Assembly: GCF_006345805.1 (NCBI RefSeq)
Contig: NC_043003.1
Location: forward strand, 63,488,001-63,552,000
Source of the DNA: Octopus sinensis
Taxonomy: Eukaryota
DNA: 64,000 nt
Direction of reading: 5' to 3'
Position numbers and translations under genes: made by a program. The notes beneath the pieces were generated by a model. That model was not told the origin of the DNA. It did not search any database and worked only from the letters and a program-made list of their open reading frames with translations. Shown piece after piece: positions 2,030 through 46,625 of the stretch. Positions within the stretch are counted from its first letter, which is position 1. Each line of letters begins with the position of its first letter.

Positions 2030-2424
2030 CATTATTTGCATTATTTACATTTGACGGATATTTGTCCTCATCTTGTTTGTTGTTAACACAACATTTCGAC
2101 TGATATACCTATTTCTTTATTACCCACAAGGGGCTAAACACAGAGAGAACAAACAAGGACAGACATAGGTATTAAGTCGATTACATCGACCCCAGTGCAT
2201 AACTGGTACTTAATTTATCGACCCCCGAAAGGATGAAAGGCAAAGTTGACCTCGGCGGAATTTGAACTCACAACGTAACGCAGACGAAATACCGCTAAGC
2301 ATTTCGCCCGATGTGCTAACGTTTCTGCCAGCTCACCGCCCTTCGGCTGATATACCCTCCAGCCTTCATCAGGTGTCTTGGAGAAATTTCGAACTTGTGT
2401 TCTCATTCCTAAGGTATTTTTCGA

Positions 2425-6027: not shown

Positions 6028-6245
6028 TTTTTCTTTATTACCAACAAGGGGCTAAACACAGAGGGGACAAACAAGGACAGACAAACGGATTAAGTTGATT
6101 ATATCGACCCCAGTGCGTAACTGGTACTTATTTAATCGACCCCGAAAGGATGAAAGGCAAAGTCGACCTCGGCGGAATTTGAACTCAGAACGTAGCGGTA
6201 GACGAAATACGGCTACGCATTTCGCCCGGCGTGCTAACGTTTCTG
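6028..6245 (-). mobile_element. SINE family B (Tx1-type tail) with 10-bp TSD
   Basis: TSD cctgtatacc at 6018-6027 and 6246-6255; tail agaggggacaaacaaggacagacaaa at 6060-6085. Confidence 0.85.
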
Positions 6246-9964: not shown

Positions 9965-10535
9965 ATACATACATACATACATACACACACAACTGCATAC
10001 ATACATACATACATACATACATACATACATACATACATACATACATACATACATACATACGTACATACGTACGTACGTACGTACGTATGTACGTACATAC
10101 ATACATACATACATACAGACAGACATACATACATACATACGTACATACATACGTACTTACATACGTACATACGTACATACATACGTACGTACGTACATAC
10201 ATACATACATACGTACATACATACGTACATACATACATACATACATACATACATACATACATACATACATACGTACGTACGTACATACATACGTACGTAC
10301 GTACATACATACGTACTTACGTACATACGTACATACATACGTACGTACGTACATACATACATACTTACATACGTACGTACATACATACATACATACATAC
10401 ATACATACGTACATACATACGTACGTACATACATACGTACATACATACGTACATACATACATACGTACATACATACGTACATACATACGTACGTACGTAC
10501 ATACATACATGCTTACATACGTACATACATGCACG
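9965..10535. repeat. Long (TACA/TACG)n microsatellite
   Basis: Direct inspection; source of many spurious ORFs. Confidence 0.95.
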
Positions 10536-16507: not shown

Positions 16508-17371
16508 ACAAACACGCATTCACATACATATTTACATATAAATATATTTATACACATACAAATATATGTAGGTGTATGTGCGCGCGCGCGTTTGTGCGTG
16601 TGAATTGAAACGGAGTTGTTCATAAACCATTCAGTACGGCATAACAGCTATAACAACTTCTCCTATACCCCGTATATGTTTCAAATATACCCGGCTTCGT
16701 AGTTTGTTTTCATAGCTATAAAAACGTCTCGTTAAAACGGGGCGCTTTTTTATAGTTTATAAGAAATTACCATTTTTATTTTATACTTTTTTAATGGATA
16801 AAACTTTCTCCTATGTTATTTATTTTCATTGCGGTTTAATAACTACTGAACAAAGCATGAATCTTATCCTTATTCTTTTTTATAGTTTGACCGTCCATCT
16901 GTGAATCTTCCTGTCATTTTTTTTCTTTCCTAATGTTAATTTCCTCTCCAACTGGTTCAACAGATTCCATAACTCCGATGGAGCTACCAGAATTAAATTA
17001 TTTCTCTCTCTTGTACCTTTCAAATATTCTTTTTATTCTAAGATACCATAACATTTAATTTCCGTTCAGGCTTTTGCATAGAAAACTTTCCACCCATTTT
17101 ATATGCTGTTATATATGCTTCCATATAAGTAATATTCGGTGCAGGTATGGCTGTGCAGTTAAGACATTTGCTTCGCAACCACGTGGTTCCGGATTCGACC
17201 CTACTGCACAGCACCTTATGCATGTGTGTTCTACCATAGTCTTTGCTTGACCAGTTCCTGACGGATGGTAGAGTTTGGTCGGTAGAGGAGATCCGTTGCG
17301 TGAACACACACACACATACACACACCACACACACACACACACACATATCTTAGTAAAAACCTTTCTTATAT

Positions 17372-17800
17372 AGGCACAAGGCCTGATATTTTGAGGGAGG
17401 GGGATAGTCGATCACTTCGACCCCAGTACTTGACTCCTACTTAATTTATCGACCCCGAAAAGATTAAAGGGCAAAGCCGACCACGGCGGAGTTTGAACTC
17501 AGAACGTAGCGACGGGTGAAATACCTATTTTTTTACTACCCACAAGGAGCTAAACACAGAGAGGACAAACAAGGACAGATAAACGAATTAAGTCGATTAT
17601 ATCGACCCTAGTGCGTAACTGGTACTTAATTTATCGACCCCGAAAGTATGAAAAGCAAAATCGATCTCGGCGGAATTTGAACTCAGAACGCAGCGACAGA
17701 CGAAATGCCGCAAAGCATTTCGCCCAGCGTGCTAACGTTTCTGCCAGCTCGCCGCTAAGCATTTAATCCAGCGTGATAATGATTCTGCCAGCTCACCCCC
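17372..17800 (-). mobile_element. Nested SINE family B: Tx1-tail copy inside the head of another copy at gcttagc^ggtatttc
   Basis: Host head at ~17757-17800, inserted copy ~17527-17756, host body ~17372-17526. Confidence 0.8.
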
Positions 17801-18660: not shown

Positions 18661-18709
<49 letters not shown>

Positions 18710-18763
18710 TAAATAATATATATATATAAATAAATAAATAAATAAATATATATATATATAAAT

Positions 18764-18844
<81 letters not shown>

Positions 18845-18863
18845 TATATATATATATAAATAA

Positions 18864-18900
<37 letters not shown>

Positions 18901-18955
18901 AATAAATATATATATAATATAAATAAATAAATAAATATATATATATATATAAATA

Positions 18956-19007
<52 letters not shown>

Positions 19008-19200
19008 AATAATATATATATATATATATAATAAATAAATATATATATATATATATATAATAAATATATATATAATATATATATATAAATAAATATATAT
19101 ATTATATATATATATATAATAAATATATATATATATATATATAATATATAAATAAATATATATATTATATATATAAATAAATATATATATATATATATAT
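18661..19200. repeat. (CT)n then pure A/T (TA/TAAA)n tract
   Basis: Direct inspection. Confidence 0.95.
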
Positions 19201-19695
19201 AAATTAATCAAAATAAAAACATGATGCCAAGGATTCAGCGGTACATATGTTTCGGGCCTTTATTAGACGGATTTATAACAATGCATAATGTGTGTCTATG
19301 GCCTTCTTCAGCCGCGCACAATTACTACCTCAAGGACATGTATTACATCAAAAATTCTACGTTGGGGATGCAAATCCTCTCATTCGCGTACGACATAATG
19401 CGGCAACAGCATAAAAATGAAGCGTCCATCTCGTCCTTCTCTCATTCTACATTGAGAGAAGGACGAGATGGACGCTTCATTTTTATGCTGTTGCCGCATT
19501 ATGTCGTACGCGAATGAGAGGATTTGCATCCCCAACGTAGAATTTTTGATGTAATACATGTCCTTGAGGTAGTAGTTGTGCGCGGCTGAAGAGGCCATAG
19601 ACACACATTATGCATTGTTATAAATCCGTCTAATAAAGGCCCGAAACACATGTACCGCTGAATCCTTGGCATCATGTTTTTATTTTGATTAATTT
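19201..19695. repeat. 244-bp-arm foldback with 8-nt loop, each arm containing a hammerhead-like motif
   Basis: Arms 19201-19444 and 19453-19695, ~3 differences; GCGG-CTGAAGA-GGCC...GGCCC-GAAAC-ACAT-GTA-CCGC at 19582-19658. Confidence 0.9.
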
Positions 19696-24979: not shown

Positions 24980-25296
24980 AGCACCACCATCACCGCCACC
25001 ACATCCACAACCACCATCACTACCACCATCATCACCACCACTACCACCACCACATCCACAACCACCATCACCACCATCATAACCATCATCATCACCACCA
25101 CCACCACCACATCCTCCACCACCATCACCATCACCATCATCACAATCACCACTACCACCACATCTACAACCATCATCATCACCACCACCACCACATCCAC
25201 AACCACCATCATCATGATCATCACCACCGCCGTCGCCACCACGTCTACGACCACCACCATCACCGTCATCATCATCATCATCTTCTTCTACAACAA

Positions 25297-25328
<32 letters not shown>

Positions 25329-25344
25329 GCAACAACAACAACAA

Positions 25345-25376
<32 letters not shown>

Positions 25377-25378
25377 GC

Positions 25379-25436
<58 letters not shown>

Positions 25437-25472
25437 CAACAACAACAAACAACAACAACAACAACAACAACC

Positions 25473-25504
<32 letters not shown>

Positions 25505-25545
25505 CAACAACAACAACAACAACACACAACAACAACAACAACAGT
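24980..25545. repeat. Compound trinucleotide microsatellite (CAC/CAT/CAG/CAA)
   Basis: Direct inspection. Confidence 0.95.
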
Positions 25546-25956: not shown

Positions 25957-25985
25957 AGGAGTGGCTGTGTGGTAAGTAGCTTGCT
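25957..25985 (+). mobile_element. 5' head of SINE family A, split by retroelement insertion
   Basis: aggagtggctgtgtggtaagtagcttgct matches the head at 54199; the body resumes at 32920. Confidence 0.9.
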
Positions 25986-27473
25986 AACGCGCATGCGTCG
26001 AGTTGTTTACTGTGTCAAGTTTTGACTAGGCGGGACAGAATCCTTTGAGCTGCTCGCCAGCGGTTTGTTGGCGAGTGGAAAAATAATGATTCGGACCTTA
26101 GCGAGTACGAGTGTCCACATCTGAGGAGGAGCTCGTTAAGGCGGTGAACAGGAATGAACAACATTTGGAGAAAATGAAGAGTTTTGCTGACGCGGCGAGA
26201 GTGAAGTGAAGAGAAAGGAAGTGGACCTGACTGAACTGAAGGAGCTGTATAAGATGACACCAGAAGGTGGGAAGTGACGTAAAGTTACTACCCCCGAAAA
26301 CGGTCATGGTGAATATGGAAAGAAAAACCATCACCTACAAGGTGCACTCAGTGCAGAGTAGGAGAGTGGAGCAGATGAATATGGAAAAAATAGAAAAAGC
26401 TCTCAAGGGGCTTTCGAACGAAGTAACATACATAGCAAACGGAAGCGGATATGGGACGGTGGTTGTCCAGTTTAAAACAGAGGAGGAGGCGAGGAGGCTG
26501 GCAAGTGCAACCGTAAAAGCTGAGGAACTGGTGCTTCTACCCTCTTATCTTGGAAGAAAAAATTCTAAGGTGAGGGTAGAAGGAATTCCACCTGACATAA
26601 AGGTGGCTTGGGTTGCGGCAGCCGTCCTCGTTGGAAGTGAGGAGGTGACTGTCCTCCAAGCCACAGAGACAGAGGAAAGAAGTTACAAAGGAAAACTACT
26701 GGAAATGACCATACAAGCGGAGGCGAAGGAGCTGGAAAATTTGGCGGAAACGGTGTCAGTGGGAGAAATAGTACTGAGAGTATGGGTAGAAGGCAGAACC
26801 CCGCGGTGCTTTAAATGTGGCCAAAAAGGCCACATTAGAGCACACTGCCCCCTACAGAAGAAAAAGAGCGCACTGCCCCCTACAGAAGAAAAAGAGGAAA
26901 AAATAGATGAACCAGTTGCGGAGACAAAGAAGAAAAAAAGAGGACGAAAGGAGAGAATGGATAGTAGCAGAAGTAGAAGAGAAGAAAAGAAAGAAAGAAC
27001 ACTGAGTGTGAAATGGTACCCCAGTCCACTCCATCCACCCAAGACCACTCAGACCCACCCGCCCCATACAGACACCAGACCCACACACTCCCTTTCCCCA
27101 CAAGAAAAAAAAAGAAAAAGAAAAAAGAGCAGACACCACAGAATTCAGAAAACCCCTCCCCGGGTGAAAAAGGTTGCGAAAGAAAGTTGTCTTTAAGTGA
27201 TAGCGAGAATGGAAAAGAAGGACTAGACCAGAGATTAGAGAAGAATTCAGACTCAAAGGCAGCGAGTGTGGTGTTGCTCAGAGTGGGGTGAGTAGCACAC
27301 TCGTCATATTTCATACTTTTTCAGATATCATGCATGTTATCATAAACTTAATTTATTTTCTCACGTTCATTTTCATGTCACTCACAGTACCATTATTTTA
27401 ATTGTTATATGTCCCCACATGTTTTTGTAGTGTCCCCTCTATGTAATGCCTTTATGGCAAAATAGTTGAAATA
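25986..27473 (+). mobile_element. ORF1-only non-autonomous Tx1/L1-clade element (HAL1-like)
   Basis: Bounded by target copies aagtagcttgct (25974-25985) and aagtagctttgct (27474-27486); gag-like ORF only; ends ...tgaaata(aa). Confidence 0.8.
26267..27196 (+). CDS. Gag-like ORF1 protein with CX2CX4HX4C zinc knuckle (homology extends upstream to ~26150; probable frameshifted tail to 27291)
   Basis: CFKCGQKGHIRAHC; aligns by eye with the ORF1 at 27882 (QSRR, YGTV, PSY.GR, LRV.VEGR.P.C). Confidence 0.8.
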   Translation: MGSDVKLLPPKTVMVNMERKTITYKVHSVQSRRVEQMNMEKIEKALKGLSNEVTYIANGSGYGTVVVQFKTEEEARRLASATVKAEELVLLPSYLGRKNSKVRVEGIPPDIKVAWVAAAVLVGSEEVTVLQATETEERSYKGKLLEMTIQAEAKELENLAETVSVGEIVLRVWVEGRTPRCFKCGQKGHIRAHCPLQKKKSALPPTEEKEEKIDEPVAETKKKKRGRKERMDSSRSRREEKKERTLSVKWYPSPLHPPKTTQTHPPHTDTRPTHSLSPQEKKRKRKKSRHHRIQKTPPRVKKVAKESCL

Positions 27474-27881
27474 AAGTAGCTTTGCTAACCTCACTGACAG
27501 AAGAGTGACTTTGCTTACCGTACTACGGTTTGGACGCGTTTTTTTTCCCGGTAAGAGTTTTGCTGTGTTGTTAATTGTTGAATTCCTACTACTGAAAATT
27601 TGCCTTTAAACGTTGCTGAACTGTCTTGTTCTCCGGTTTTACGGGAAATAATTGAATAATTTCTTACCGTTGAACTGTTAGCCATTGTGGCTTTTATTTA
27701 CGTGACTATATATAGTCCTGCCTGCAGACTATTTTCGTGCCCCTCCCCCGAATGGGGGTGGGAATTGGAATTTTTGAACTGCTTTTTTGAACTACTTTGG
27801 AAGAAAAACTTTCTATAGGTTTCCCAGTTTTGTGGGAAACCAATATTCGTAATTTTTGTGTTGTCTAATTTCAACAGAATA

Positions 27882-29279
27882 ATGTCTGTTGAAATTATTC
27901 ACGAAAGTAGTGCTCTTGAGGAGAGCAATGTTAAAAAATTTTCTGAGGTGGCCGCAGTGGCTACCGAGAACATCGATATCGATGTCAATCAGCTCGTCGA
28001 GCTATTTAAAAGAATGCAAGAGGAGGGTGGTGATGTTAAAATATCACCCTCCGCCAGTATCGTGGAGACCGAGAAGCGGACCGTAGTGTTTAAAACTTTC
28101 TGTCCACAAAGCAGAAGGTTCAAACACTTTGAAAAAAGCACCATCGAGAAATGCCTGTCCCCAATTTGGAAGGACATCGTGTACGTCGCCAGGGGACGGG
28201 CATATGGCACTGTGGATGTCCGCTTCTCGGGGGAAGAAATGGCCCGCGGGCATTCTGTAAACCCCCTAAAAACCAAGGAGGTGGTACTTTTTCCAAGCTA
28301 TAGGGGACGCAGGACGTCCCGGGTCAGGATTGTAGAAGCCCCGCCGGAAGTAGATCCGGTAGAGGTAGTGGCCGCCCTATTATATAAATGGGCGGACAAA
28401 ATAAAAATACTAGAAGTAACATGCTCTACCCCTCGATTTTGGCTCGGGCGTAACATTAATATATTAATTCAAGGAACAGCGGAGGACCTACAGCTCCTTC
28501 CTGAGAGGGTGCTCGTGGGCGAGAACGTAGCCCTCAGGGTACAGGTCGAAGGCCGAAAACCCACCTGTTACGCCTGCGGCAAAAAGGGCCACATTCGTGT
28601 AGACTGTCCAGACAAGCAAAAGAAACCGCAGACACCAGGCCCCTCAGATAATAAAAAAGTCCCTACCCTTGCAAACACACCTACCCCTACAAAAACAAAA
28701 AATCCCACTCCTGCTGTTACGGTGCCAACCCCAAAACAGACTGAAGAAAAAACCCAGCCCTCGCACTCACAAACCCCTACACTATTAAAACCTCCCACCC
28801 CCCTAAAAACTGCGGCGCCTACCGAAACAACTATTGCTCCCAGACGATACCATGGAGGTATCAGAGGGGGGATTTACACCAGTTCGTAAAAGAATTCGTG
28901 CAGCATCCCCGTCCACATCCCCTACAAAAAATAATAAAAACAAACACCACCACAGACACGGAAAAAAAAATCCCGCTCAACTGGCCCAGAAAAAGAAGAC
29001 AAAAAGAAAATGAACTCATATTAATTGAATTCGACACACAAGACAAATACATAAACGATATTGTGGTTCAGCATCAGTCAGCAAGACTACAACAAATACA
29101 AAGATCGAAATAGACACGCGTGGATTGCGGAAACAACGTTCAAACAATTAAAAGACAGACACCCAAACGCCATCCGGCATGTCGCGAACTTGCCGGACTA
29201 TCTGAAGAAAGAGGAGAAAGAAGGGGCCCACAAACGTGTGGTGAGGTCGGCCCCCACCTCTCCAATGAAATGTAAGTAG
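27882..29279 (+). pseudogene. LINE ORF1 (gag-like, CCHC knuckle, Pro/Thr/Lys-rich C-terminus), apparently frameshifted twice
   Basis: CYACGKKGHIRVDC; ORF pieces 27858-28889, 28898-29113, 29061-29279. Confidence 0.8.
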
Positions 29280-29296
29280 AACTTTTACTTTTTGTA

Positions 29297-32200
29297 ATGG
29301 CTTCGCTTAACCTTGGTTGTTTAAATGTGCGTGGTCTGAGTTCGAAGTGGAAGCAGGCTTGTTTCCTCGACGACCTCAGATCACATGATATACATGTGTG
29401 ATGGTTGCTACAGAGACCAAGCTGGACAGCCTACAAACCTTCTCGCCTCTCCTGAATGGCTACGAGAAAATCATGTCTCCTGGCCAGACCGGAGGGCGAG
29501 GGGGCGTAGTGGTACTGATCCGTAAAGACTTGGCTCTACAGACAAGTACAGTCTATGTAGACCCAGAAGGTGGGCTGGTCGTCCTTGATGTGACATACGC
29601 AGTAAGGCCTTCAGGTTGATCGGACTCTATGCACCTTGTGCTAGAGGTTTCCAAACTGATTTTTATCGGCGCCTAGAGGGCTTTCTCGTGACGTCGAAGA
29701 CTTTAGTGATATTAGGGGACTTTAATGCTATCGTTGACGTACACATCGATAGCGTTGGCTCGATCTATAGGAAAGTGAACTCACGTCTCGTGGATCTGCT
29801 TAAGCGGTTTCAGCTAGCAGATCGTTACAGACTTGACCATCCGAACGTCCCAGAGTGGACCTGGATGAGTGGCGACGGAAGGTTCAAGTCTTATCTAGAC
29901 AGGATAGTGATAAGAACTAGAGATAAGTCTAGTTTTAGTTGTCCACAGCTCGTCCAGGTGCCCTATACTGACCATAGAATGGTCACGTGTAGACTGGACA
30001 TAGATAGCACACTTAAGATAGGAACCGGCTACTGGAAGCTGAACAAGTCTATTTTGACACGCGAGGCATACCGTAGCCGGATTAAGGTGTTAGTGCAGAG
30101 GGCGTTAACCGGAGCCGTGGTTAATAACCGGTGGTGGTTCACCCTCAAAAAGCCATTCGATTCGAGTCCATTAGATTTAGTAACAACTAAGACTAGATAG
30201 GGCTAGAATAGAAGGGCAACTAGTTAAGAACTTAGAGGAGGCGTTGAGGTTGGGCTCTGCATCTCACATTTTAGCGGCGGCGAGAACGGCATTAGACCGT
30301 CACCTCAAAACCAAACATGAGGGATGTAGAGTCGGGCTAAAGTACGAGCATTGGGCCGTGAGGGAATTAATGTTGCCGGATGGGCCCCCGTACGATAGAA
30401 ACACAGCGTGGAAACGATGCCACAATTGGGTCTCTTGTTGATGAAAACGGATGCACGATCAAGAAGCGGGACGAGATGTGTGAGGCACTTCACAAGCACT
30501 TCGCCGAGTTGTTCGGGAGGTGCGGGACGCTGGATCATGGTGAGCCCTTAGGGACTTCCTGTGGTGGGCCCGCGCCTCTCGACACGAGAGGCTGAGTGCT
30601 GTGAAGGGCCAATCACATCCGAGGAAGTAATCGAGGTGTTGGGCAAGTGCCCCGGGGAGAAGTCGCCGGGTCTCGATGGTCTGCCCTATGAATTTTATAG
30701 AAGTATGCCAGACTTGTTCGGGCACCTGCTGGCTAGCGTCTACGCCAACTGGCACAGAATGGGAGAATTCCCAAGTCTGCGAGCCGGGGGGCGGTGACGT
30801 TGATCAGGAAGGACCCGAACAAGGGGGACGAGATAGGGAACTTCAGGCCCATAACTCTGTTAACACCAGAGTTAAAGATTCTGGCCAAGGTGCTAGCAAA
30901 AAGGTTGGCGCGGGTCGTGGACAAACTTGTCGGGGAAGCGCAAACGTGCGCTATCCCCGGCAGAACGATCCACGACAATCTCCACCTTATACGCTACTCC
31001 TAGAGAGGGGGGGGGGAAGCTTCTGGCGCAGGGGAGCACTGGTACATTTAGACCAGTCCAAAGCATTTGATAGGGTCGACCATCGGTACCTGGCGGCGGT
31101 CCTCGGAGAGGCTGGCCTAGGCCGACCTTTCGAGGTTGGATCGCTGCTTTGTATAGCGACATCGAGTCTGTAGTCAAGGTGAACGGTTCCTTTTCGAAGC
31201 CGTTCAGGATCGAGCGTTCAGTTCGTCAAGGGTGTCCCCTGTCCTCGCTCCTATACGTATTGGCTCTTGAGCCTTTGCTGCGGAAGTTGGAGGCACTAGG
31301 GGGCGCGCCGCATGATCTATGGTGTGGAAGAGGAGCTACGGCGTATGCGGATGACACCTCCATCATCGTGGCAGACGAAGGCCAGCTTCCAGTCGTGGAA
31401 GAGGCCATCAAAAGCTACGAGGCGGTGGCAGGAGCAAAGGTTAACAAGGACAAGTCGGTCGGTTTGCAACTCGGCACCTGGAGGGGCAAGCCGATGCCGT
31501 CCAATAACGTCGTAGGGCGTTGGACGGAAGTCCTGTTAAGCTGCTCGGAGTCTGGTTCGGGCCAGACCTCCAGATTGAGAAAAATTGGAGTGAGGTGGCC
31601 AACAAGGTGACCGCTCTAACCCAGACCTGGTCTGGGCGGGCGTTATCCCTGCTAGGGAAGGCGGAGGTGGTGCAGATGTTTATAGCATCAGTAATCACCT
31701 ACCGCCTGACCGTGGTGCCTTGCCCCGATTTGTGGCTGAACAAGTTGGAGAGAATCCTTTTCCGATTTTTGTGGAAAGGAGGAAAGCCACTTGTAAAGCG
31801 CTCTGTCTGCTGCCAGAAACCGCTAAAGGGTGGGCTAGGGATGCCTTGGCTGAGGATGCGAAAATCGCGTTAAGGTTGAGGCACCTCTGGCTTTACCTGG
31901 ATGGAGAGCAGGTGTGGTCGCCGCACGTCCGGTTCTACCTTCCCCAGTTAACATCCCTAACGGACATCGGTGCATGGATCAAGCGGAGACCTAAAGTGAA
32001 TGGCATTTGGAGTGCCGTCAGGCGCTCCAGCTACTATCTCGGGTGGGCAACGCCGGCAACAGGAGTTCCACCACGGATTTCTATAGCGGGTTAGTGGAGA
32101 TTAAGTCCGAAGACGCCTTGGGGGAGACCCTGGGCTACGATGAAAATCAGTTGGTCAACTTGTTCCGAAGGACGTTCGGGCTGGGGTATCTGGATAATTA

Positions 32201-32677
32201 CCAGAAATCCCTGGCCTGGCAGTGTTTCCGTGCGGCTTTACCTGTTCGCGACAAGCTGTCAAGGCACGGTAGTGCCGTCTCGCCGACATGCCCGCGATGT
32301 GAGCAGGATAGGGAGACCGTCTTGCACGCATTCGTGGAGTGTCCGGAGTTATCGGGACTGATAGCTTTTGTTGAACAACTGTTGTCAGTGATGGGAAGAG
32401 TACAGCTATCAGCTGAGTCTATCATCGAGATTGTGCCGCCCCCTTTCCTTAACAGGGAAAGAAAGGCTTGTTTTTTCTGTGTAGTAGCCATACTGAAAGA
32501 AACAGTATGGAAGACGCGTACGAAAGGTATAGTGACAGGCACCTTGTCTCTGGCCAGGGGTTGATTAACTTTTTTAGTTACCACCTCAGTAGCAAAATCA
32601 GGCTGGAGAAGAGGTGTCTGTCACGAGATATTTGTGAAAAGAGGAAGCCTGTGGCATACAAGATGGTATGTTGGTAA
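29297..32677 (+). pseudogene. LINE ORF2: APE endonuclease, reverse transcriptase and C-terminal zinc finger; about ten or more frameshifts
   Basis: LNVRGL, ATETK, GDFN, YLDR, TDH (APE); KSPGLDG, RPITLL, DQSKAFDRVDH, RQGCPLS, YADD, LLGV (RT); CPRC...ETVLHAFVEC. Confidence 0.92.
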
Positions 32678-32919
32678 TTGTTGTGAGGTAAGTGTGACCC
32701 GATCAGAAAGTAAAGGTTCTACCCGGATGGCTGGGTGTCCGTCCTTCGACATGATCATTAATATTTTTAAACATTGCCTTCGTAAAATTCATTGTTTATA
32801 ATCTTATCCGTAATTTCATTCGAAAATTGTAACTGTGTTAAGCTACTTCACCCTTTATATTTGTCTGTCCTTGTTTGTCCCCTCTTTGTAAATGCCTAAA
32901 TGGCAAATTATATGAAATA

Positions 32920-33069
32920 AAGTAGCTTGCTTATGAACCACATGGTTCCGGGTTCAGTTCCACTGCATGGCACCTTGGGCAAGTGTCTCCTACTTATAGC
33001 CTCGAGACGACCAAAGCCTTGTGAGTGAATTTGGTAGACGGAAACTGAAAGAAGCCCGTCGTACATATG

Positions 33070-33128
<59 letters not shown>

Positions 33129-33325
33129 TTTTGTGTGTCTGTGTTTGTCCCCCCAACATCGCTTGACAACCGATGCTGGTGTCTTTACGTCCCCGTAACT
33201 TAGCGGTTCAGCAAAAGAGACCGGTAGAATAAGTACTAGGCTTATTAAGAATAAGTCCCGGGGTCGATTTGCTCGACTAAAGGCGGTGATCCAGCATGGC
33301 CGCAGTCAAATGACTGAAACAACTA
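32920..33325 (+). mobile_element. 3' remainder of the split SINE family A copy
   Basis: aagtagcttgcttatgaaccacatggttccgggttcagttccactgc... continues the head at 25957 and is colinear with 54199-54613. Confidence 0.9.
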
Positions 33326-34779: not shown

Positions 34780-35410
34780 GCAGCGAAATGGCAGAACAGT
34801 TTGCACGCCGTACAGAATACTTAGCAGTATTTCGTCCGTCTTTACGTTCTGAGTTCAAATTCCATTGAGGTTGACTTTCCCTTTCGTCCTTTCGAGATCG
34901 ATAAAATAAATATCTGTTGAGCACTGAGATTGATGCAATTGACTACACACTTCCCCTAAAATTTCGTTCATATCTAAAAGGGGGTTAAAGATACAGTGGA
35001 CAAACAAGGACAGACAAAGGGATCAAATCGATTACATCGACCCCAGTGTGTAACTGATACTTAATTTATCGAACCAGAAAGGATGAAAGACAAAGTCGAC
35101 CCCGGCGAAATTTGAACTCAGAACATAAAGACAGACGAAATACGGCTACGCATTTCGCCCGGCGTGCTAACGTTTCTTATTTCTTTATTGCCCACAAGGG
35201 CCTAAACATAGAGGGGACAAACAAGAAAAGACAAAGGGATCAAATCGATTACATCGACCCCAGTGTGTAACTAGTACTTAATTTATCGACCCAGAAAGGA
35301 TGAAAGGCAAAGTCGACCTCGGCAGAATTTGAAATCAGAACGTAGCGACAGACGAAATACGGCTACGCATTTCGTCCGGCGTGCTAACGTTACTGCCAGC
35401 TCGCTGCCTT
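34780..35410. mobile_element. SINE family B cluster (one plus copy, tandem nested minus copies)
   Basis: Repeated gaaaggatgaaaggcaaagtcgacc modules; junction gtgctaacgtttct|tatttctttattgccc at ~35175. Confidence 0.8.
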
Positions 35411-37094
35411 AGAACTCCTAATAATATTGAATCATAAAAATACAATATAATTTTTTAAACATCGAATGGCCAGGTGGGTCCACCAGAATATAAAACAGGA
35501 GTCCAAGGAGTCCATAGGTAAACAAAAAAAATGCTTGAGAAACATTTATTTACGAGAAACTGTTCAAACAAGAAATCGAAACTGGAACTATGGCATAGAA
35601 ACAGCTGATTGAAAGCCTATTTCTTCTCTGCGGCACATGCTTCAATTCCGTATTCGAGAAAATAACTTCCAGTTCATCTGAACGGCAAAACCAATTAATT
35701 ACCAATATTTTGGAGATGCACAGCCAATCGTTTAAACCTGAAGCATAAAGTACAGTAGTATAACAACATAAATATTATTATTTCCTCTGTCAGAACAAAA
35801 CAAATCAAAATAAATTGACAGGAAATTATCAAGCTTCGCTATTTGTTCCCGACTTGATTGTTTCACACATCTAGTTTGATTTTAATTAAATTGAATTCAA
35901 GTATTTATTGGTTTGTAAAAGAAATGATTGGTTATGAAATTAATTAGCTGATCTGTTCTTTTTAAGTAATAACAGATTTATAATCTAATTGCTAGCTTTA
36001 ATATATTTCTGTAGTCATATCTACAATCTCTGAATTAATTGTTACCAGATGACTGTCAAGAATAATTATCGAGTGATATCTAATTTATATTAGTGTCCTT
36101 CCAACTATTACGGCTGCTGAATAATATAATCTGTAATTTTAGTTGCATTTAAAAATTAGCTTCGAATAACTGACATCCATAACTGAAGAACCAGCTCATA
36201 GCTGAGAAATGGCCATCGTTTAAATTTTTAACACAGCACGAATTGCCAATGATTACGTTCACAGTAAAACCGCCGAATGGAAACCGGATGTCAGCTTCGA
36301 TTCCCGATTAATGCCTCTTCACTTCATTTTTGTTTCTAACACATTTGTAGAATGCATGAATGTCACAGCATTATATTTCATGTCCTGTGTAAGCCTAGGG
36401 CTTTAACCTATCAATACTGTTCAGTGTAGGGACTGACAGGTGAAAGATTAGACCCAACGTTTCCGAGCGACTAAAAGAGGGTTCAAGGTATTTGTACCCT
36501 TATCTCGCAAAGCCTTCACCAGTAAAAACTACTGAAAACTGATTCACGGATTGGAGGGTTGTCGTGTGAGTGGTGCAAAGGGGCCATCCACCAGGAATGG
36601 TAGGGAATCACCAACAAACCGGGGATGCAACGATGCGCTGTTACAACACATGCACCCCATACTAGTATTATTTCTACTACTACTATAGCTGCTGCTACTA
36701 CTATGATTGCTGCTGCTACTACTACGACTGCTGCTGCTGCTACTACCACTACTATTACGATTACTACTGCTGCTACTACTACTACTACTAACTACTACTA
36801 CGACGACGACGATTGCTGCTGCTGCTGCTACTACTACTTCTACTACTACTACTACTACTCCACGTAAGCAAAAAGGCAGCTCTGTATGTGAATCTAGAAA
36901 ATAATTATGATCTGGTTTTGAGTATCCCATTGACGCAGCTTAATCCAATACAAATACAGATAATCGCCAGACAGGGTTAAAGCGATAGACCGAATGGGGA
37001 GGCTGAGTGTTCGAATCCAAAGTACAATTCATTCGACACGTTTCCGAGCCGCCTAGTTTCTGTTTTGTGGTTTTTCATTAACCCACGACTATAA

Positions 37095-38430
37095 TGGTTC
37101 TAGATTTTGGCACAATGCCAGCAATTTCAGGGAAGTGGGTAATTCTATTACATCGACCCCAGTACCTGACTTGTACTTATTTCATCGACCCCGAAAGGAT
37201 GAAAGGCAAAGTCGACCCCTGCAGAATTTGAACTCAGAACGTAATGCCGCTAAACATTTGCTCGGTGGGCTAACGATTCTCTTATCTACTCCAGACACAA
37301 GGCCCGAAATTTGGGGGGAGGAGGCCAGTCAATTAGATCGACTCCAGTACGCAACTGGTACTTAATTTATCGACCTCGAAAGGATGAAAGGCAAAGTCGA
37401 AAGCGGTGGAATATGAACTCAGAACGTAAAGACAGACGAAATACCGCTAAGCATTTGGCCAGGAGTGCTAACGTTTCTTATTTCTTTATTGCCCACAAGG
37501 GGCTAAACATAGAGGGGACAAACAAGGACAGACAAAGGGATTAAGTCGATTACATCGACCCCAATGCGTATCTGGTACTTAATTTATCGACCCCGAAAGG
37601 ATGAAACGCAAAGTCGACCTCGGTGGAATTTGAAATCAGAACGTAACGGCAGACGAAATACGGCTACGCATTTCGCCCGGCGTGCTAACGGTTCTACCAG
37701 CTCACCGCCTTACAACTCCTAATGATATTATTTTCTACTCTAAGCACAAGGCCCGAATTTTTTGGGAAGAGGGCCAGTCAATTAGATCGACCCAGTATGC
37801 AACTGGTACTTAATTTATCGACCCCGAATGGATGAAAGGCAAAGTCGACCTCGGCGGAATTTGAACTCAGAACGTAGCGGCAGACGAAATACCTATTTCT
37901 TTACTACCCACAAGGGGCTAAACACAGAGAGGACAAACAAGGACAGATAAACGGATTAAGTCGATTATATCGCCCCCAGTGCGTAACTGGTACTTATTTA
38001 ATCGACCCCGAAAGGATGAAAGGCAAATCAACCTCGGCGGAATTTGAACTCAGATCGTTAAGGCAGGCGAAATACCGCTCGGCATTTCGCCCGGCGTGCT
38101 AACGTTTCTGCCGGCTCGCCGCCTTACCCCATAACAATATTAGAGGAAATCTGTGATAATGAACTGACAGAATCGTAAGCATTCCAGAAAAAAAAAATTG
38201 CTTAGCAGATTTTTTTCCAGTTTAAAGCGGGGAGCTGGCAGAATTGTTAGCACGCGCGTCAAAATGATTATCGACATTTCTCCCGTCTTTATGTGTTGAG
38301 TCCACACTCCGTTTGAGTCGACTTTGACTTTTATCCTTTCGGCATCAATAAGCACCAGTTGTGCACTGTGGTCGATGTAATCCACTTACCTCAATCCCCG
38401 AAATTGCTGGCCTTGAGCCAAAATTTGAAA
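37095..38430. mobile_element. Dense SINE family B cluster with composite nested copies
   Basis: At least five modules on minus (37095-38125) and one on plus (~38230-38430). Confidence 0.85.
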
Positions 38431-40049: not shown

Positions 40050-41595
40050 TGTGTTATTAACTGTTCAATGTTTGGTTTATTGAAGCAACTTTCTACTGCA
40101 TCGTCTTCTACACTTCCGTGTTACTGGGGTGTGTGCAGCATTGTGTGTTCTTTTCTGCTGTTGGGAGTGTGCGAACTCTTCCTGGTACTGTATTGTGTTG
40201 TGGTGCTGTCTTTTGTTGTGTTACTGCTTATATCGTGTTGAGTGTGTAATACCTTGATTTCTGGCTTGCTGGTGGAAGTTTATTCCACTGGGTAAACGGT
40301 GTATAGAGTGTATCTTGTATTTGTGGGTTGCTTTGTTTAGGTTGTATTACTGGATTGATAACGTCTCATATAGGATATGGGCAATTCCTAGCAGGGCTAT
40401 TTTTTAGACAGTGTGTAGTGTTGAGGGTCCAGGTATAGCTTCTACATTTTTATTCATATGATTTTTTATCATGCCCAATGCTCCAGTTATTCTTTTCTCC
40501 TCTAGGCACAAGGCACGAAATTTTGGTGAAGGGGACCAGTCGATTAGATCGACTCCAGTACGCAACTGGTACTTAATTTATCGACCCTGAAAAGATGAAA
40601 GCAAAATCGACCGCAGCGCAACAGCGCAATTTGAGCTAAGAACGTAAAGACAGACGAAATACCTATTTCTTTACTGCCCACAAGAGGCTACACACAGAGG
40701 GGACAAACAAGGACAGACAAACGGATTAAGTCGATTATATCGCCCCCAGTGCGTAACTGGTACTTATTTAATCGACCCCGAAAGGATGAAAGGCAAAGTC
40801 GACCTCGACGGAATTTGAACTCAGAACGTAGCGGCAGACGAAATACCTATTTCTTTACTTCCCACAAGGAGCTAAATATAGAGGGGACAAACAAGGACAG
40901 ACATAGGTATTAAGTCGATTACATCGACCCCAGTGTGTAACTGGTACTTAATTTATCGACCCCGAAAGGATGAAAGGCAAAGTCGACCTCGGCGGAATTT
41001 GAACTCAGAACGTAACGACAGACGAAATACCGCTAAGCATTTCGCCCGGCGTGCTAACGTTACTGCTAGCTCGCCGCCTTAATGCTCCAGTTATTATTGG
41101 TATTGTTTTTACCTTCATGCCCTATATTTTGAATACTTCAATTTCGAGGTCTTTGTACTTCGACAATTTCTCCAATTCTGCATTGGCAATCTTTTGATCT
41201 GAAGAAACAGTAATGTCTACAGGTGATTTTTCCCCAATCACTGACTATCATGTGTGGACGATTAGCTTTTATGAACCTGCATATCCGAGATGATTGTGGC
41301 CTGATCGTTGTCTTGTATCTTGCTTGGCACATGCTTATACCACTTGCACTCAGTTTTGACGTTGTAATGTTGGCATATTTTCCAGTGGATATAACTGTTT
41401 ACTTTGTCGTGTCTGTATACATATTCAGGCTTGGCAAGGACTGGGCAGCCCGAGGTGATGTGGTCAACTGTCTCATTGTGCTGGTTGCACAATCTACATT
41501 TGGTGTTGAGGCCTGTTTTCATTATTTTGTTTTTATAATTTTTCGTAGTCAGGCATTGGTCCTTTCGTTTCGGCTTTTTGTCCAAAGCTTTTGAG
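40050..41595 (-). mobile_element. 5'-truncated R4/Dong-like RLE non-LTR retrotransposon (C-terminal zinc knuckle plus restriction-like endonuclease)
   Basis: CRLC...ETVDHITSGC, RHD, ANRP, KYKDLEIEV, IPIITGALG, KIALLGIAHIL; interrupted by SINEs at 40492-41080. Confidence 0.8.
40492..41080 (-). mobile_element. Trimeric SINE family B composite with 15-bp TSD
   Basis: TSD aatgctccagttatt at 40477-40491 and 41081-41095; two internal gaaatacc|tatttc junctions. Confidence 0.85.
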
Positions 41596-43120: not shown

Positions 43121-45574
43121 CTTTCTATGGTCCTCTCTCTCTCCCTGACTCTCTTTCCGAAGAGAAAAAAAAAAACAAAAAAAAAAGTAACCCCGAAAAG
43201 CACAGTTTTCATTGTCATTCGTAGTCAGAGGAGTTTCGTGTCATCTACTGACAATTGCACTGTTTGGTATTTAGCCTGTAGACAGGAAAACTGTTTATTA
43301 GCTAAAATATACACAAGAGAAGAAAATTAGCTTTAATGAATTCTCGTGACTCAATATTCAGCGCGTCTCGCTCGATATAGGACAGAATGGTGAATTACCA
43401 TCTGCGAAAGTTCAACGCTACTGTCATGATATCAAGAATAAATCTCCTTCACTTTAATACAAAACCCTCTGCTAAAATATCTCGTTCATTCATTGTACGG
43501 TCGGTCTCCTGTGCTGAATGGGAGAGAATCTTTGGACAGGAACTAAATCTTGCATTATTGATTTCATAGGATATTTTGGCACGGCTCCAAGTCAGTAGTA
43601 ACGTTTTGATACAAGAAATTGCATCTGATTACTTTGCAACAGAAATAAAAACAGTTTATTTGTTCCGCCTGCCAAATATTCCTTCATTATTAATGAGATT
43701 TGGTCGATTATTACTTAGCGTCGTTCTTTGCAAGGGATTTTCGCTAAATACGGTGCTATGTTTTTGGTTTTCAATCATCAGGACCAACACTCACCCATCC
43801 ATCCAGCCTCTTTCTTTGTGTTATCGTTTAGCCCTCGGCTATTCCTAATTGGATAGACCTGCGATCAAAAGTATTCCAGCGATGACCATGAAATCATTTT
43901 AATTCTATCTTTTCTTCTTGCAAACACCTAATGATGCATTTATCCGTATGTCCGTTTTATATTTAAAGACAGTGAGTAATTTGAAGGAAATCTGGCTGCT
44001 ATTTCTAGGAGATCGAGTGACCACTAGGTGGTTCCTTCTCTTCCTATACAGGCGGCAATATTTAGCGAGATATATATTAAGTTTATGGCAGTATCGTAAA
44101 AGAAAGTTAAAGATAGCGTTGTTGCTTTCTCAACGAAGTGGGATGAATAATTTATAAGTGAGGTCATGACAGGACGCTGTGGGGTCAAACAAGTTGTCAC
44201 TCATTTCTAGTTCCATAGAAATACACGACCCACCGACCTTTTTTTCTGCGCTGAATAATTAGGAAGTGATCAGTAGTAAAACGAAAGGTTATATTTCATT
44301 TGTCAGTTTAACTGAGCATATCATACTGGTTTAGGGAAAAACAGAACACACAAGAAAGCTGAGAAGCTTCAACAATAACGGCAGCCAAAACAGTGAAAAT
44401 AGAACTCATAAACAGTCTTTTAAACGCCTCATTCAGTGACTACTGCTTATCAACGTTGTAAATCCAACAAGAGTCATCTACGTGGTCTTTCAATCTGCTA
44501 GAAACAGTAGCCAAATCTCTTCCTTCTATCTCTTTCTTAAATCATAGTATATTGTCTAACACAGTGTTTCTCAGATTATTATTATTTTTTTTTTTAACTA
44601 TGGACCCCTTCAATTCCTATTTTACTTGGGCGGTCCCTTGTAGCTATTCGATGTTTTAAAAACCCTGTTGTGTTTTTATGATTAAATATTATGAGGAATT
44701 ATACCAAAAAAAAAATTGCTAAAATATGTTGTGCATCGTAGAATTATAAGCAATTTAATGCGCATAAAAAGCAAAAAAATCTTACATGGACCTGGTTGGG
44801 AGTCCCACTGGTCTAAGAAAAGAATAATGTGAGCGTGAGTTCCTAATACATAGCCTTTAAATCCTTAAAGCAAAATGAACTTCACTAATGGAATCGTAGT
44901 CAGAAGAGTTTCTGTTAGAAGAAAAATGTAAGTTGGGAGATTTCGTAAAACCGAACAGCATTTCTTTTCCATATGAGCTAATCCGGAAGAGGGCGAAGAG
45001 AAAAATCATACAATTCTGCTTATAAAAAGACTGATGCGGACTAAATTTTTCATCATGTCAAATTGTACACATGGCTCTCCAAAATAGATTAGGATAGGTT
45101 CTTTAAATTGAGAAACAACGCAAGTCATGGGCTGTACCTTTGAAAATGAAGACTCAGTCACAACACAAGCTGAAATTATTAGACATATTTCTGACTGTAG
45201 ATTTGCCCTTCAATTCACGAGTCAAAGATACACAAAGTTGCAGTAACAGGAAACCACGTATTCATGGGCTAATTGTGAAATTAAAGTTTTCTTTGTTTTG
45301 CATCGCAGCACGAGAGAGTGGTCAAAGCATGGTTAACGAAAGGTGACATGTGGTCAGTGGGCGTCAAAATAAATTTACAACTTATCGTGGCATTCGAAGT
45401 GCGCAGAGGCAAACCGGAAGTGGGCCTAATAAAAAAAAGCGTAGAAACCAAAGAACATGAGATTAAATAATACATCTCAGAAAAAGTATTTGCTACATTT
45501 GCCGGAGTAAAAAATGTCGCAGACGGGAAAGTTTGAGTAAAATCAAGATAAACGAAAAGTAATCCTTTCTACTG

Positions 45575-46625
45575 AAGGTACAATGCCTGAAAATTTGGGA
45601 AAGGGGATTAAGTCGATTACATCGACCCCAGTGTTTCACTGATGCTTAATTTATCGTTCCCGAAAGGATGAAAGGCAAAGTCGACCACGGTGAAATTTGA
45701 ACTCAGAACGTAATAGCAGACGAAATACCCATTTCTTTACTACCCACAAGGGGCTAAACACAGAGAGGACAAACAAGGACAGACAACCGGATTAAGTCGA
45801 TTATATCGATCCCAGTGCGTAACTGGTACTTATTTAATCGACCCCGAAAGGATGAAAGGCAAATTCGACCTCGGCGGAATTTGAACTCAGAACGTAGCAG
45901 CTGATGAAATACCGCTAATCATTTCGCCCGGCGTGCTAACGATTTTACCAGCTCGCCGCCGTATAATGATTTCAAATTTTGCCACAAGGGCAACAGTTCT
46001 GAGGGGAGGGGAGGAATCGGTTACATCGACTTTGGTACTCATCTGGTACTTATTTTATCGACTGTGAAAAAATGAAAAGAAAGTCGACCTCGGCGGAATT
46101 TGAACTCAGAACGTAAAAACGGACGAAATGTCATTAAGTATTTGTCCGGCATGCTAACGATTCTGCAAGCTCGTTATCTTCAGATAAACGAAAAATAACG
46201 AAAATCAACAGCACCAACAAAAGAAGAAAACACACCAGTTTCTTTTCTTTTCTTTTTTTTGTTTTTGTTTTTTGCGAGGTGAATAGGGTGCCAGCCAAAA
46301 CTCTGGGGATGGCAAATGAAACCACATGGTTGCAAAGCGAGCTCCCTAACCACACAGCTGTTGGAAAGAAACATTTTATCACATTATCTCTAACTGCCTT
46401 CTCTTATACTTTTCTACTTTAGGCACAAGGGCCCGAAATTTTGAGGGAGGGGACCAATCGATTAGGTCGACTCTAGTACGCAACTGGTACTTAATTTATC
46501 GACCCCGAAAGGATGAAAGGCAAAATCGACCACAGCGTAATCTGAACTCAGAACGTAAAGACAGACGAAATACTGCTAAGCATTTCGCCAGGTTTGCTAA
46601 TGATCCTGCCAGCCTGCCGCCTTTA
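45575..46625 (-). mobile_element. SINE family B cluster including a nested dimer
   Basis: Modules ~45575-45960, 45975-46175 and 46420-46625. Confidence 0.8.

What the first reader, a model, noticed from the sequence alone, without database searches (positions are those of the whole stretch)
25957..33325. Two different retroelements stacked at one site inside a tRNA-derived SINE: a SINE-targeting Tx1-clade system
Seen: a SINE A copy is cut just after its A-box-like region. The head ends ...ggtAAGTAGCTTGCT (25985) and the body resumes AAGTAGCTTGCTtatgaaccac (32920). Between them lie two elements, separated by a third target copy AAGTAGCTTTGCT (27474-27486). Both start with AAC and end with TGAAATA(A). 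Known: Tx1-clade LINEs are often sequence-specific (Tx1L/Tx2L in DNA transposons, Keno in U2 snRNA genes, Dewa in tRNA arrays) and form tandem arrays in their targets. Inference: this family uses a high-copy SINE as its safe harbour. The outer target copies are identical while the middle one has an extra T, so the pair may even have moved as one read-through unit.
Basis: partly seen in the sequence, partly recalled or inferred. Interest (0 to 1): 0.9.

Follow-up and report, generated by a model that had tools for sequence, protein, structure and literature searches.

The report
Two LINEs stacked in one SINE site
Two related jumping genes of the L1/Tx1 type, one full-length but broken and one carrying only the first gene, sit head-to-tail at exactly the same 12-base spot inside a short repeat (a SINE), which points to a cut-site-specific retrotransposon of a known kind with a new landing pad.

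Summary
A SINE copy is split after its A-box-like motif. The order is head, AAGTAGCTTGCT, E1 (25986-27473), AAGTAGCTTTGCT, E2 (27487-32919), AAGTAGCTTGCT, body. Joining the flanks restores an intact SINE.

- **E2** is a 5.4-kb non-LTR retrotransposon with an intact ORF1 (two RRM-like units plus a CCHC knuckle). Its ORF2 (APE, RT, zf-RVT) is broken by about ten frame changes.
- **E1** is a 1.5-kb ORF1-only relative. Its ORF1 is 40% identical to E2's, and the two share only the first three bases and a roughly 45-base 3' tail.

The RT belongs to the L1 superfamily and scores closer to Xenopus Tx1 than to human L1. Clade membership is not resolved (bootstrap 49%).

Two insertions at one site, with three target copies, argue strongly for sequence-specific cutting followed by sequential insertion. 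Family-wide SINE targeting could not be tested, because no other copy of either element was reachable.

Indirect support:
- A second SINE shares E2's tail, and its target duplications begin with GGTAT.
- Two families of E2's sister clade, in another organism, share one 14-base flank motif; one has a roughly 17-base duplication there, the other forms arrays.

Verdict: a probable new member of a known kind, of moderate interest.

The parts
25957..25973 (+). 5' part of the SINE A head, up to the insertion point. It contains the A-box-like TGGCTGTGTGG at 25962-25972.
25974..25985 (+). Target copy 1, AAGTAGCTTGCT.
25986..27473 (+). E1, a 1488-bp ORF1-only non-autonomous LINE relative. It starts AAC and ends GAAATA.
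   Evidence: tblastn with E2 ORF2 finds nothing inside it.
26267..27196 (+). E1 ORF1 (309 aa as listed; first ATG at 26306), with a CCHC zinc knuckle and a weak RRM match. It is 40% identical to E2 ORF1.
27474..27486 (+). Middle target copy, AAGTAGCTTTGCT (one extra T).
27487..32919 (+). E2, a 5433-bp LINE that appears full-length (5' UTR, ORF1, ORF2, 3' UTR). It starts AAC and ends GAAATA.
27858..28889 (+). E2 ORF1, intact (343 aa as listed; ATG at 27882). The model shows two RRM-like beta-alpha-beta-beta-alpha-beta units followed by a CCHC knuckle.
29297..30200 (+). E2 ORF2 apurinic-type endonuclease domain, spread over three frames.
   Evidence: The best solved-structure match is the L1 endonuclease.
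30590..31870 (+). E2 ORF2 reverse transcriptase domain, with several frame changes and in-frame stops.
32007..32564 (+). E2 ORF2 C-terminal part with the zf-RVT zinc-binding motif, as one open frame.
32862..32919 (+). E2 3' tail, TTTGTCTGTCCTTGTTTGTCCCCTCT...GGCAAATTATATGAAATA. It is shared with SINE B and, in its last ~45 bases, with E1 (27425-27473).
   Evidence: A 30-base stretch is 29/30 identical to three SINE B copies, E = 3e-7.
32920..32931 (+). Target copy 3, AAGTAGCTTGCT.
32932..33325 (+). Rest of SINE A: B-box-like GGTTCAGTTCC at 32951, the body, an internal (TA)n(TG)n run, and the tail ...GACTGAAACAA.
2110..2341 (-). Solo SINE B copy carrying the E2-type tail. It is flanked by the 15-bp duplication GGTATATCAG[C/T]CGAA (2095-2109 and 2342-2356).
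6028..6245 (-). Solo SINE B copy flanked by the 10-bp duplication GGTATACAGG (6018-6027 and 6246-6255).
17526..17753 (-). SINE B copy nested in the head of another SINE. The target head ...AAATGCTTAGC lies upstream and the target resumes GGTATTTCACC right after the B tail.

Best explanation
E1 and E2 are two members of one Tx1-like (L1-superfamily) LINE lineage. They were inserted one after the other, by target-primed reverse transcription, into the same 12-bp site (AAGTAGCTTGCT). That site lies between the A-box-like and B-box-like motifs of a high-copy SINE.

Proposed mechanism:
1. A sequence-specific ORF2 endonuclease nicks the bottom strand at GGT|AAG. The exact position is uncertain by 0-2 bases, because the element's terminal A's overlap the target's AA.
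2. The top strand is nicked 12 bp downstream.
3. The first insertion leaves a target copy on each side.
4. The second insertion uses one of those copies, giving T-E1-T'-E2-T.

E2 is, or derives from, the autonomous type. E1 has no ORF2, so it was moved in trans by an ORF2 protein of this lineage. That protein would recognise the 3' tail that E1 and E2 share, which explains why E1 landed on the identical site.

**Shown:** the anatomy, the three target copies, the restored empty site, the domains, the shared tail, and the absence of ORF2 from E1.

**Inferred:** endonuclease specificity, the order of events, mobilisation in trans, and that the SINE is the usual target of the family.
For: **At the locus**
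- The three target copies and exact boundaries are as described.
- Within 64 kb the 12-mer occurs only in heads of this SINE, with 4 matches against 0.22 expected.
- The rejoined empty site aligns to intact copies without a gap.
- Domains: zf-CCHC, Exo_endo_phos, RVT_1 and zf-RVT.
- For P0001, the intact 57%-identical relative used as proxy for E2's broken RT, L1 ORF2p is the best solved relative (4e-50 against 4e-24 for R2). E2's own endonuclease matches the L1 endonuclease best.
- P0001 scores 270 bits against Xenopus Tx1 ORF2 and 174 bits against human L1. The Swiss-Prot Tx1 protein appears among the profile hits.
- The neighbour-joining topology puts E2 on the Tx1 side.
- The two ORF1s are 40% identical. 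There is no nucleotide similarity between E1 and E2 apart from the ends, so these are two families and two events.
- E1 has no ORF2 remnant.

**Specific cutting in the lineage**
- SINE B carries E2's tail, 29/30 identical over 30 bases.
- Both solo SINE B copies have duplications that start with GGTAT. Five nested copies abut |GGTATTTC in another SINE's head (one reads G|GGTATTTC).
- E2's sister clade (bootstrap 100), found in another organism, ends in the same GAAATAA(A).
- Two of its families share the 14-base flank motif TTGACT[A/C]TGCTGGA. One has a ~17-bp duplication there. The other forms head-to-tail arrays with the motif in each inter-unit spacer.

**Precedent**
- Tx1 families are known to target DNA transposons, LTR elements and small-RNA genes. 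Tandem copies sandwiching a target duplication are read there as sequential insertions (PMC4494074).
- L1-Tx1 families are annotated in octopus genomes (PMC13282606).
Against: - This is one locus only. No other copy of E1 or E2 is in the window, and none was reachable elsewhere. The family's flank statistics are therefore unknown.
- Three other heads of this SINE in the window are empty. That is expected if SINE copies greatly outnumber LINE copies, but it gives no support.
- Tx1-clade placement is weak in my crude tree (49% bootstrap).
- SINE B's site (N|GGTAT) is not the E1/E2 site, so it shows specificity in the lineage, not specificity for SINE A.
- Two further sister-clade families (L128, L129) are followed by other sequences, so not every relative shares one target.
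- E2's ORF2 is dead, so this copy itself cannot be the source of the enzyme.
Confidence: 0.62

Rival explanations
1. The pair moved as one unit. A transcript that started at E1 and read through E1's end and a target copy into E2 was reverse-transcribed from E2's tail, and inserted once into this SINE copy.
For: - The outer target copies are identical, while the middle one has an extra T.
- Both elements have the same orientation.
- E1's end plus the target forms AATAAA only across the junction (GAAATA|AAG), so E1 on its own carries no obvious terminator.
Against: - The source locus would itself need the layout E1-target-E2. That again requires two site-specific insertions, so this rival adds a step without removing one.
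- One extra T in 13 bases is easily a later mutation or a slip during fill-in.
- A 6.9-kb full-length cDNA is less likely than two separate events.
- No second E1-T'-E2 pair could be looked for.
Confidence: 0.12
2. There is no real sequence specificity. An ordinary, loosely specific LINE inserted first, and the second element was drawn to the fresh junction, for example by a local DNA structure or by homology of its tail to the resident tail.
For: The two elements share a 3' tail, so annealing of the cDNA or RNA to the resident copy is conceivable. Only one locus is available.
Against: - The second event reproduced both nick positions exactly and duplicated the same 12-13 bases.
- A homology-driven event would be expected to join within the shared tail, not to recreate a clean target copy between the elements.
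- Relatives show repeated use of one target, with long duplications.
- SINE B duplications start with GGTAT in both solo copies.
Confidence: 0.1
3. The stack arose by unequal recombination or gene conversion between two copies of the SINE, one carrying E1 and one carrying E2, or it is an assembly join of two such loci.
For: The SINE is abundant, with five copies in 64 kb, so homologous partners are available. Assemblies of repeat-rich genomes do contain mis-joins.
Against: - This rival still needs both elements at the same base of the SINE, so it keeps site specificity.
- A crossover within 12 bases of homology is unlikely.
- There is nothing odd in the sequence at the junctions.
- Reads were not available to test the assembly.
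Confidence: 0.06

Closest known systems
Tx1-Mar LINEs and SINEU-3 in the Mariner-N4_AMi transposon of crocodilians (Kojima 2015, PMC4494074)
   Same: - An L1/Tx1-type LINE and a non-autonomous passenger use one defined site inside another abundant mobile element.
- The duplication has a fixed sequence (16 bp there, 12 bp here).
- Tandem copies sandwich a target duplication, which is read as sequential insertion.
   Different: - The target there is a DNA transposon; here it is the head of a SINE.
- The passenger there is a SINE with an snRNA-derived head; here it is an ORF1-coding half-LINE.
- That case rests on hundreds of copies; this one rests on a single locus.
Tx1L in the Tx1D (piggyBac-type) element of Xenopus laevis
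   Same: It is the founding case of a LINE that lives inside another mobile element. Its ORF2 (Swiss-Prot YTX2_XENLA, P0263) is the named protein closest to this lineage among those I could compare.
   Different: - Identity to P0001, the closest intact relative of E2, is only about 31%.
- The target is different.
- Endonuclease specificity was shown at the bench for Tx1L and has not been shown here.
Dewa (tRNA gene arrays), Keno (U2 snRNA genes) and Mutsu (5S rRNA genes): Tx1-clade LINEs that target small-RNA genes
   Same: The target is a short, multicopy sequence of the small-RNA gene type (tRNA, snRNA, 5S). Tandem arrays form in the target. This comparison rests on my own knowledge and on the introduction of PMC4494074.
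   Different: The target here is not a functional tRNA gene but a retroposon head that no tRNA model recognises. The site sequences are unrelated.
HAL1 (half-L1) of mammals and other internally deleted non-autonomous LINEs (cited in PMC4494074)
   Same: Like HAL1, E1 keeps an open ORF1 and LINE ends but has no ORF2, so it must be moved in trans.
   Different: - E1's parent family is not known.
- E1's ORF1 is only 40% identical to that of E2.
- Whether E1 is a family or a single deleted copy is untested.
LINE-SINE pairs with a common 3' tail (Ohshima and Okada; eel UnaL2/UnaSINE1)
   Same: SINE B carries about 60 bases of E2's 3' tail. This is the classic mark of a SINE that borrows a given LINE's reverse transcriptase.
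   Different: Mobilisation has not been tested. SINE B's insertion motif (GGTAT) differs from the E1/E2 site, so its actual partner may be a sister family of E2.

Membership tests
Non-LTR retrotransposon, L1 superfamily | ORF2 with an N-terminal apurinic-type endonuclease | tested here: met
   Exo_endo_phos scores 2.9e-12. The best solved relatives are the L1 endonuclease and L1 ORF2p.
Non-LTR retrotransposon, L1 superfamily | LINE-type reverse transcriptase closest to L1-group enzymes | tested here: met
   RVT_1 scores 1.2e-24 for E2. For P0001, the intact 57%-identical relative, L1 ORF2p scores 4e-50 against 4e-24 for R2.
Non-LTR retrotransposon, L1 superfamily | C-terminal cysteine-histidine motif after the RT | tested here: met
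   zf-RVT scores 1.6e-09 in 32007-32564.
Non-LTR retrotransposon, L1 superfamily | Target-site duplication flanking the element | tested here: met
   Copies of 12-13 bp lie on both sides of each element.
Tx1 clade | RT groups with Tx1 reference families, apart from L1, in a phylogeny | tested here: inconclusive
   - phmmer with P0001 gives Tx1 ORF2 270 bits and human L1 174 bits.
- The neighbour-joining topology places E2's clade with Tx1 and apart from L1.
- The relevant split has only 49% bootstrap.
- No Repbase reference set or RTclass1 was available.
Tx1 clade | ORF1 with RRM-type domain(s) and a CCHC knuckle | tested here: met
   - zf-CCHC is found in both ORF1s, and RRM_3 weakly in E1.
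- The model has two beta-alpha-beta-beta-alpha-beta units at pLDDT 70-85.
- The best fold matches are tandem-RRM proteins, though weak, with E about 1e-3.
- That this ORF1 type is typical of Tx1 comes from my own knowledge.
Site-specific LINE (target-specific family) | Most copies of the family are flanked by the same target sequence | not testable with these tools
   There is only one locus. No other copy is in the window. The protein and DNA collections hold no copy from this genome.
Site-specific LINE (target-specific family) | Independent insertions reuse the same nick positions, giving tandem copies separated by one target copy | tested here: met
   E1 and E2 are different families (40% ORF1 identity). 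They sit at the same base and are separated by one target copy.
ORF1-only non-autonomous LINE (HAL1-like), for E1 | Open ORF1, LINE termini, no ORF2 | tested here: met
   - The ORF1 is open for 309 aa.
- There is no ORF2 match inside E1.
- Its 3' tail aligns with that of E2.
ORF1-only non-autonomous LINE (HAL1-like), for E1 | Exists as a multi-copy family that amplified in this form | not testable with these tools
   Only one copy is available.
tRNA-derived SINE (SINE2), for the target | Head recognisable as a tRNA, with internal A and B boxes | tested here: inconclusive
   An A-box-like TGGCTGTGTGG and a B-box-like GGTTCAGT[C/T]CC lie 43 bp apart in intact copies. ARAGORN and Rfam give no tRNA call, even at E up to 10.
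LINE-SINE tail partnership (E2 lineage with SINE B) | SINE 3' end homologous to the LINE 3' end | tested here: met
   Identity is 29/30 over 30 bases in three copies, E = 3e-7. The alignment extends over about 60 bases.

The most novel reading that the evidence does not exclude
A whole lineage of Tx1-like LINEs in this octopus-type genome may both supply the 3' tails of the dominant SINEs and use SINE heads as landing sites. The SINEs would then be passengers and safe harbour of the same LINE lineage at once. That would explain the nested SINE-in-SINE arrays seen all over the window.
Probability: 0.25. Interest if true: 0.65.

Novelty: new member of a known kind. Interest (0 to 1): 0.45.

Why it matters
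Site-specific LINEs are the natural models for targeted gene insertion by target-primed reverse transcription, and each new target widens the set of known endonuclease specificities.

A LINE that lands in the promoter region of a SINE would also be a case of one retroelement disabling copies of another while hiding in sequence the host does not need.

In octopus-type genomes SINEs make up roughly a tenth of the DNA (PMC13282606). Knowing which LINE moves them, and where it cuts, would help explain how these genomes grew. The shared tail between E2 and SINE B gives a concrete candidate partner.

Tried and rejected
- **Other copies in the window.** blastn and tblastn with E1, E2 and their proteins found none.
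- **Other copies elsewhere.**
  - The stitched ORF2 found only 18 proteins. The best, at 57% identity, sits on a 3-kb contig with no flanks.
  - The ORF1 profile found nothing.
None of those fetched has any further similarity to E2, E1 or the SINE, so they are chance matches.
- **Source names for the best representatives.** The cluster look-up returned no informative names.
- **tRNA origin of the SINE heads.** ARAGORN and Rfam are negative at both the gathering and the permissive thresholds.
- **SINE B as a proxy for the E1/E2 site.** I considered whether SINE B uses the same site as E1/E2, and it does not. SINE B uses N|GGTAT; E1/E2 use GGT|AAG. The second apparent SINE B junction type (|AGAAACGTTAGC) is one event copied by a local duplication, not two events.
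- **The repeated [SINE B + SINE C] composites.** I could not decide whether these are recurrent hits or a composite family. One composite is flanked as a whole by the duplication CTGGAGCATT.
- **Programmed frameshifts in E2 ORF2.** Rejected: there are about ten frame changes plus in-frame stops.


Full report
**1. The observation**

- A SINE ('SINE A') starts near 25957.
- Its head runs to GGT at 25973, followed by AAGTAGCTTGCT (25974-25985).
- Next comes E1 (25986-27473), then AAGTAGCTTTGCT (27474-27486), then E2 (27487-32919), then AAGTAGCTTGCT again (32920-31).
- The rest of the SINE runs to about 33325.

If the block from 25986 to 32931 is removed, the sequence aligns without a gap to three uninterrupted copies of the same SINE in the window.

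The 12-mer, with at most one mismatch, occurs four times in 64 kb against 0.22 expected, and every match lies in a SINE A head.

The split separates an A-box-like TGGCTGTGTGG from a B-box-like GGTTCAGTTCC. These are 43 bp apart in an intact copy and about 7 kb apart here.

ARAGORN and the Rfam models do not call any SINE head in the window a tRNA, even at permissive thresholds. 'tRNA-derived' therefore remains a reading of the box motifs only.

**2. What the two inserts are**

*E2 (5433 bp).* It has a 371-base leader and an open ORF1 of 343 codons. ORF2 is recognisable along its whole length but spread over all three frames.

- Pfam finds zf-CCHC in ORF1, and Exo_endo_phos, RVT_1 and zf-RVT in ORF2.
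- ORF2 has about ten frame changes and several stops, so this copy is dead.
- A structure model of ORF1 is of moderate quality (pLDDT 70-85 over residues 70-240). It shows two beta-alpha-beta-beta-alpha-beta units followed by the knuckle.
- Its best fold matches are tandem-RRM proteins, but these are weak, with E about 1e-3.

*E1 (1488 bp).* It has a leader, an open ORF1 of 309 codons with the same CCHC knuckle, and a 3' untranslated part. It contains nothing that matches ORF2.

- The two ORF1 proteins are only 40% identical.
- At the DNA level E1 and E2 share only the first three bases (AAC) and a terminal stretch of about 45 bases: GTCCCCTCT.TGTAA(A)TGCCT..ATGGCAAA.TA..TGAAATA.
- E1 is therefore a separate, ORF1-only, non-autonomous relative of the 'half-LINE' type. 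It is not a deletion derivative of this E2.

**3. Which kind of LINE**

- For P0001, the closest intact relative found (57% identical to E2), the best solved-structure relative is human L1 ORF2p. It scores 4e-50, against 4e-24 for R2.
- E2's endonuclease matches the L1 endonuclease best.
- A profile of the relatives retrieves the Swiss-Prot Tx1 ORF2 of Xenopus (P0263).
- phmmer with P0001 gives Tx1 270 bits and human L1 174 bits.
- A neighbour-joining tree puts E2 and P0001 in a clade with several unnamed proteins, with bootstrap 100. That clade sits on the Tx1 side and away from human L1.
- The split that matters has only 49% support.

I therefore file E2 in the L1 superfamily as Tx1-like. 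Strict clade membership remains open. L1-Tx1 families are already annotated in octopus genomes (PMC13282606; PMC8967140).

**4. How the stack most likely arose**

Two different elements sit in the same orientation at the same base, each bounded by the same 12-13 bases. This is what a sequence-specific endonuclease with a fixed 12-base stagger produces when it acts twice: the second event uses one of the two target copies left by the first.

The same layout, tandem copies sandwiching a target duplication, is described for Tx1-Mar and SINEU-3 in a Mariner element, and is read there as sequential insertion (PMC4494074).

E1 has no endonuclease or RT. It must have been moved by an ORF2 protein of the lineage, and the shared tail is the likely handle. 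That explains the shared site.

The 3' boundary is uncertain by 0-2 bases. Relatives end in GAAATAAA, and the target begins with AA. This would allow two bases of pairing between the RNA end and the nicked DNA.

The extra T in the middle copy can be a later mutation or a slip, and does not call for read-through. A read-through unit would in any case need a source locus built by the same two site-specific events.

**5. Indirect evidence that the lineage cuts specific sequences**

*(a) SINE B.* A second SINE in the window carries E2's tail. It is 29/30 identical over 30 bases in three copies (E = 3e-7), with alignment over about 60 bases. This is the classic mark of a LINE-SINE partnership.

- Its two solo copies have clean duplications, GGTATACAGG and GGTATATCAG[C/T]CGAA.
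- Five further copies end right before GGTATTTC (one reads G|GGTATTTC) in the head of another SINE.
- In one of these the whole target head is still present upstream.
- The enzyme that moves SINE B thus nicks at N|GGTAT. That is a different site from GGT|AAG, but it is a specific one.

*(b) E2's sister clade.* It comes from one ENA sample of an unknown eukaryote.

- Its members end in the same way...GGCCTTGTGCC...GAAATAAA.
- Two different families share the 14-base flank motif TTGACT[A/C]TGCTGGA.
- One of these families has a duplication of about 17 bases there.
- The other forms long head-to-tail arrays with that motif in each inter-unit spacer.
- Two further families have other flanks.

**6. 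What is not shown**

No other copy of E1 or E2 could be reached, so the central claim, that the family uses SINE A as its harbour, rests on two events at one locus.

Because all near-matches to the 12-mer in this window are in SINE A heads, an enzyme that needs those 12 bases would land in SINE A almost by default. That is an inference.

Three other SINE A heads in the window are empty.

**7. Comparison and novelty**

Tx1-type LINEs that live in defined sites of other mobile elements or of small-RNA genes are well known: Tx1L/Tx1D, Tx1-Mar/Mariner-N4_AMi, Keno, Dewa and Mutsu (PMC4494074).

A SINE head as the target, shared by an autonomous LINE and a half-LINE, did not turn up in the full-text searches. 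It differs from the known cases only in the identity of the target.

I rate it a probable new member of a known kind, with interest 0.45.

The more novel reading is that one LINE lineage both supplies the tails of the dominant SINEs and lands in SINE heads. The evidence allows this but does not establish it (probability about 0.25).

Noticed in passing
window 2110-2341, 6028-6245, 17526-17753, 35192-35404, 37493-37706, 37905-38120, 40678-40847, 40862-41075, 45741-45957 (all on the minus strand): A second SINE ('SINE B') shares about 60 bases of 3' tail with E2. Its solo copies have duplications that start with GGTAT, and nested copies abut GGTATTTCG in another SINE's head. This makes it a candidate SINE partner of the E2 lineage, with a sequence-specific nick site.
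   Followed up: partly
window, all SINE B copies listed: All ten copies with the SINE B tail lie on the minus strand, whereas SINE C-type copies lie on both strands. The bias may come from nesting, from local duplication, or from orientation selection inside a gene.
   Followed up: no
window 17357-17755, 37732-38122, 40488-41077, 45561-45959: A ~400-bp composite (a full SINE B, then a SINE C from its position 45) recurs four times at 84-89% identity. The one at 40487-41080 is flanked as a whole by the duplication CTGGAGCATT. Either the same site is hit repeatedly or the composite is itself a mobile unit.
   Followed up: partly
window 35028-35428 versus 37329-37729: Two 400-bp stretches are 88.5% identical, including flank outside the SINEs. 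This is a local segmental duplication, so the two |AGAAACGTTAGC junctions count as one event.
   Followed up: partly
window 27858-28889 versus 29297-32564: E2's ORF1 is fully open while its ORF2 has about ten frame changes. At the ORF2 rate, about three breaks would be expected in ORF1 (chance of none is about 0.04). The ORF2 part is also richer in G+C (0.53 against 0.49). Possible causes are a master copy with a dead ORF2, uneven assembly errors, or chance.
   Followed up: no
window 27470-27475 and 32916-32921: The hexamer AATAAA is formed only across the junction of the element end (GAAATA) and the target (AAG). The insertion site thus completes a polyadenylation-like signal.
   Followed up: no
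window 3852-4045: A 5'-truncated SINE C-like copy ends directly against a SINE A copy that starts at TAGC. That is 3 bases from the E1/E2 insertion point in SINE A coordinates, and no SINE A head lies upstream. It may be a coincidence of 5' truncation, or another hit near the same site with loss of the head.
   Followed up: no
L007 1644-1664 and 8185-8205; L005 1383-1399 and 8204-8220: In an unknown eukaryote (ENA ERZ21867824), relatives of E2 sit next to the motif TTGACT[A/C]TGCTGGA. In L007 it is part of a duplication that ends ACCTC, is followed by AGGTAAGT (like a splice donor), and is preceded by CCAAT-like and TATA-like motifs. The target could be a small-RNA gene, or perhaps a spliced-leader gene.
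   Followed up: partly
window 37740-37776, 40490-40530 and others; L005 1326-1365, L128 7625-7670, L129 7643-7690: The tail of SINE C (CCCAAAATTTCGGGCCTTGTGCCTAGAGTAGAAAATAA) closely resembles the 3' ends of E2's sister-clade LINEs (CCCCCAAAA...GGCCTTGTGCCTA...GAAATAAA). SINE C may also depend on this LINE lineage.
   Followed up: partly
window 5487-5875, 9965-10534, 18676-19217, 24982-25543, 62613-64000: Several blocks of tandem or low-complexity repeats showed up in the self-comparison. They were not examined.
   Followed up: no
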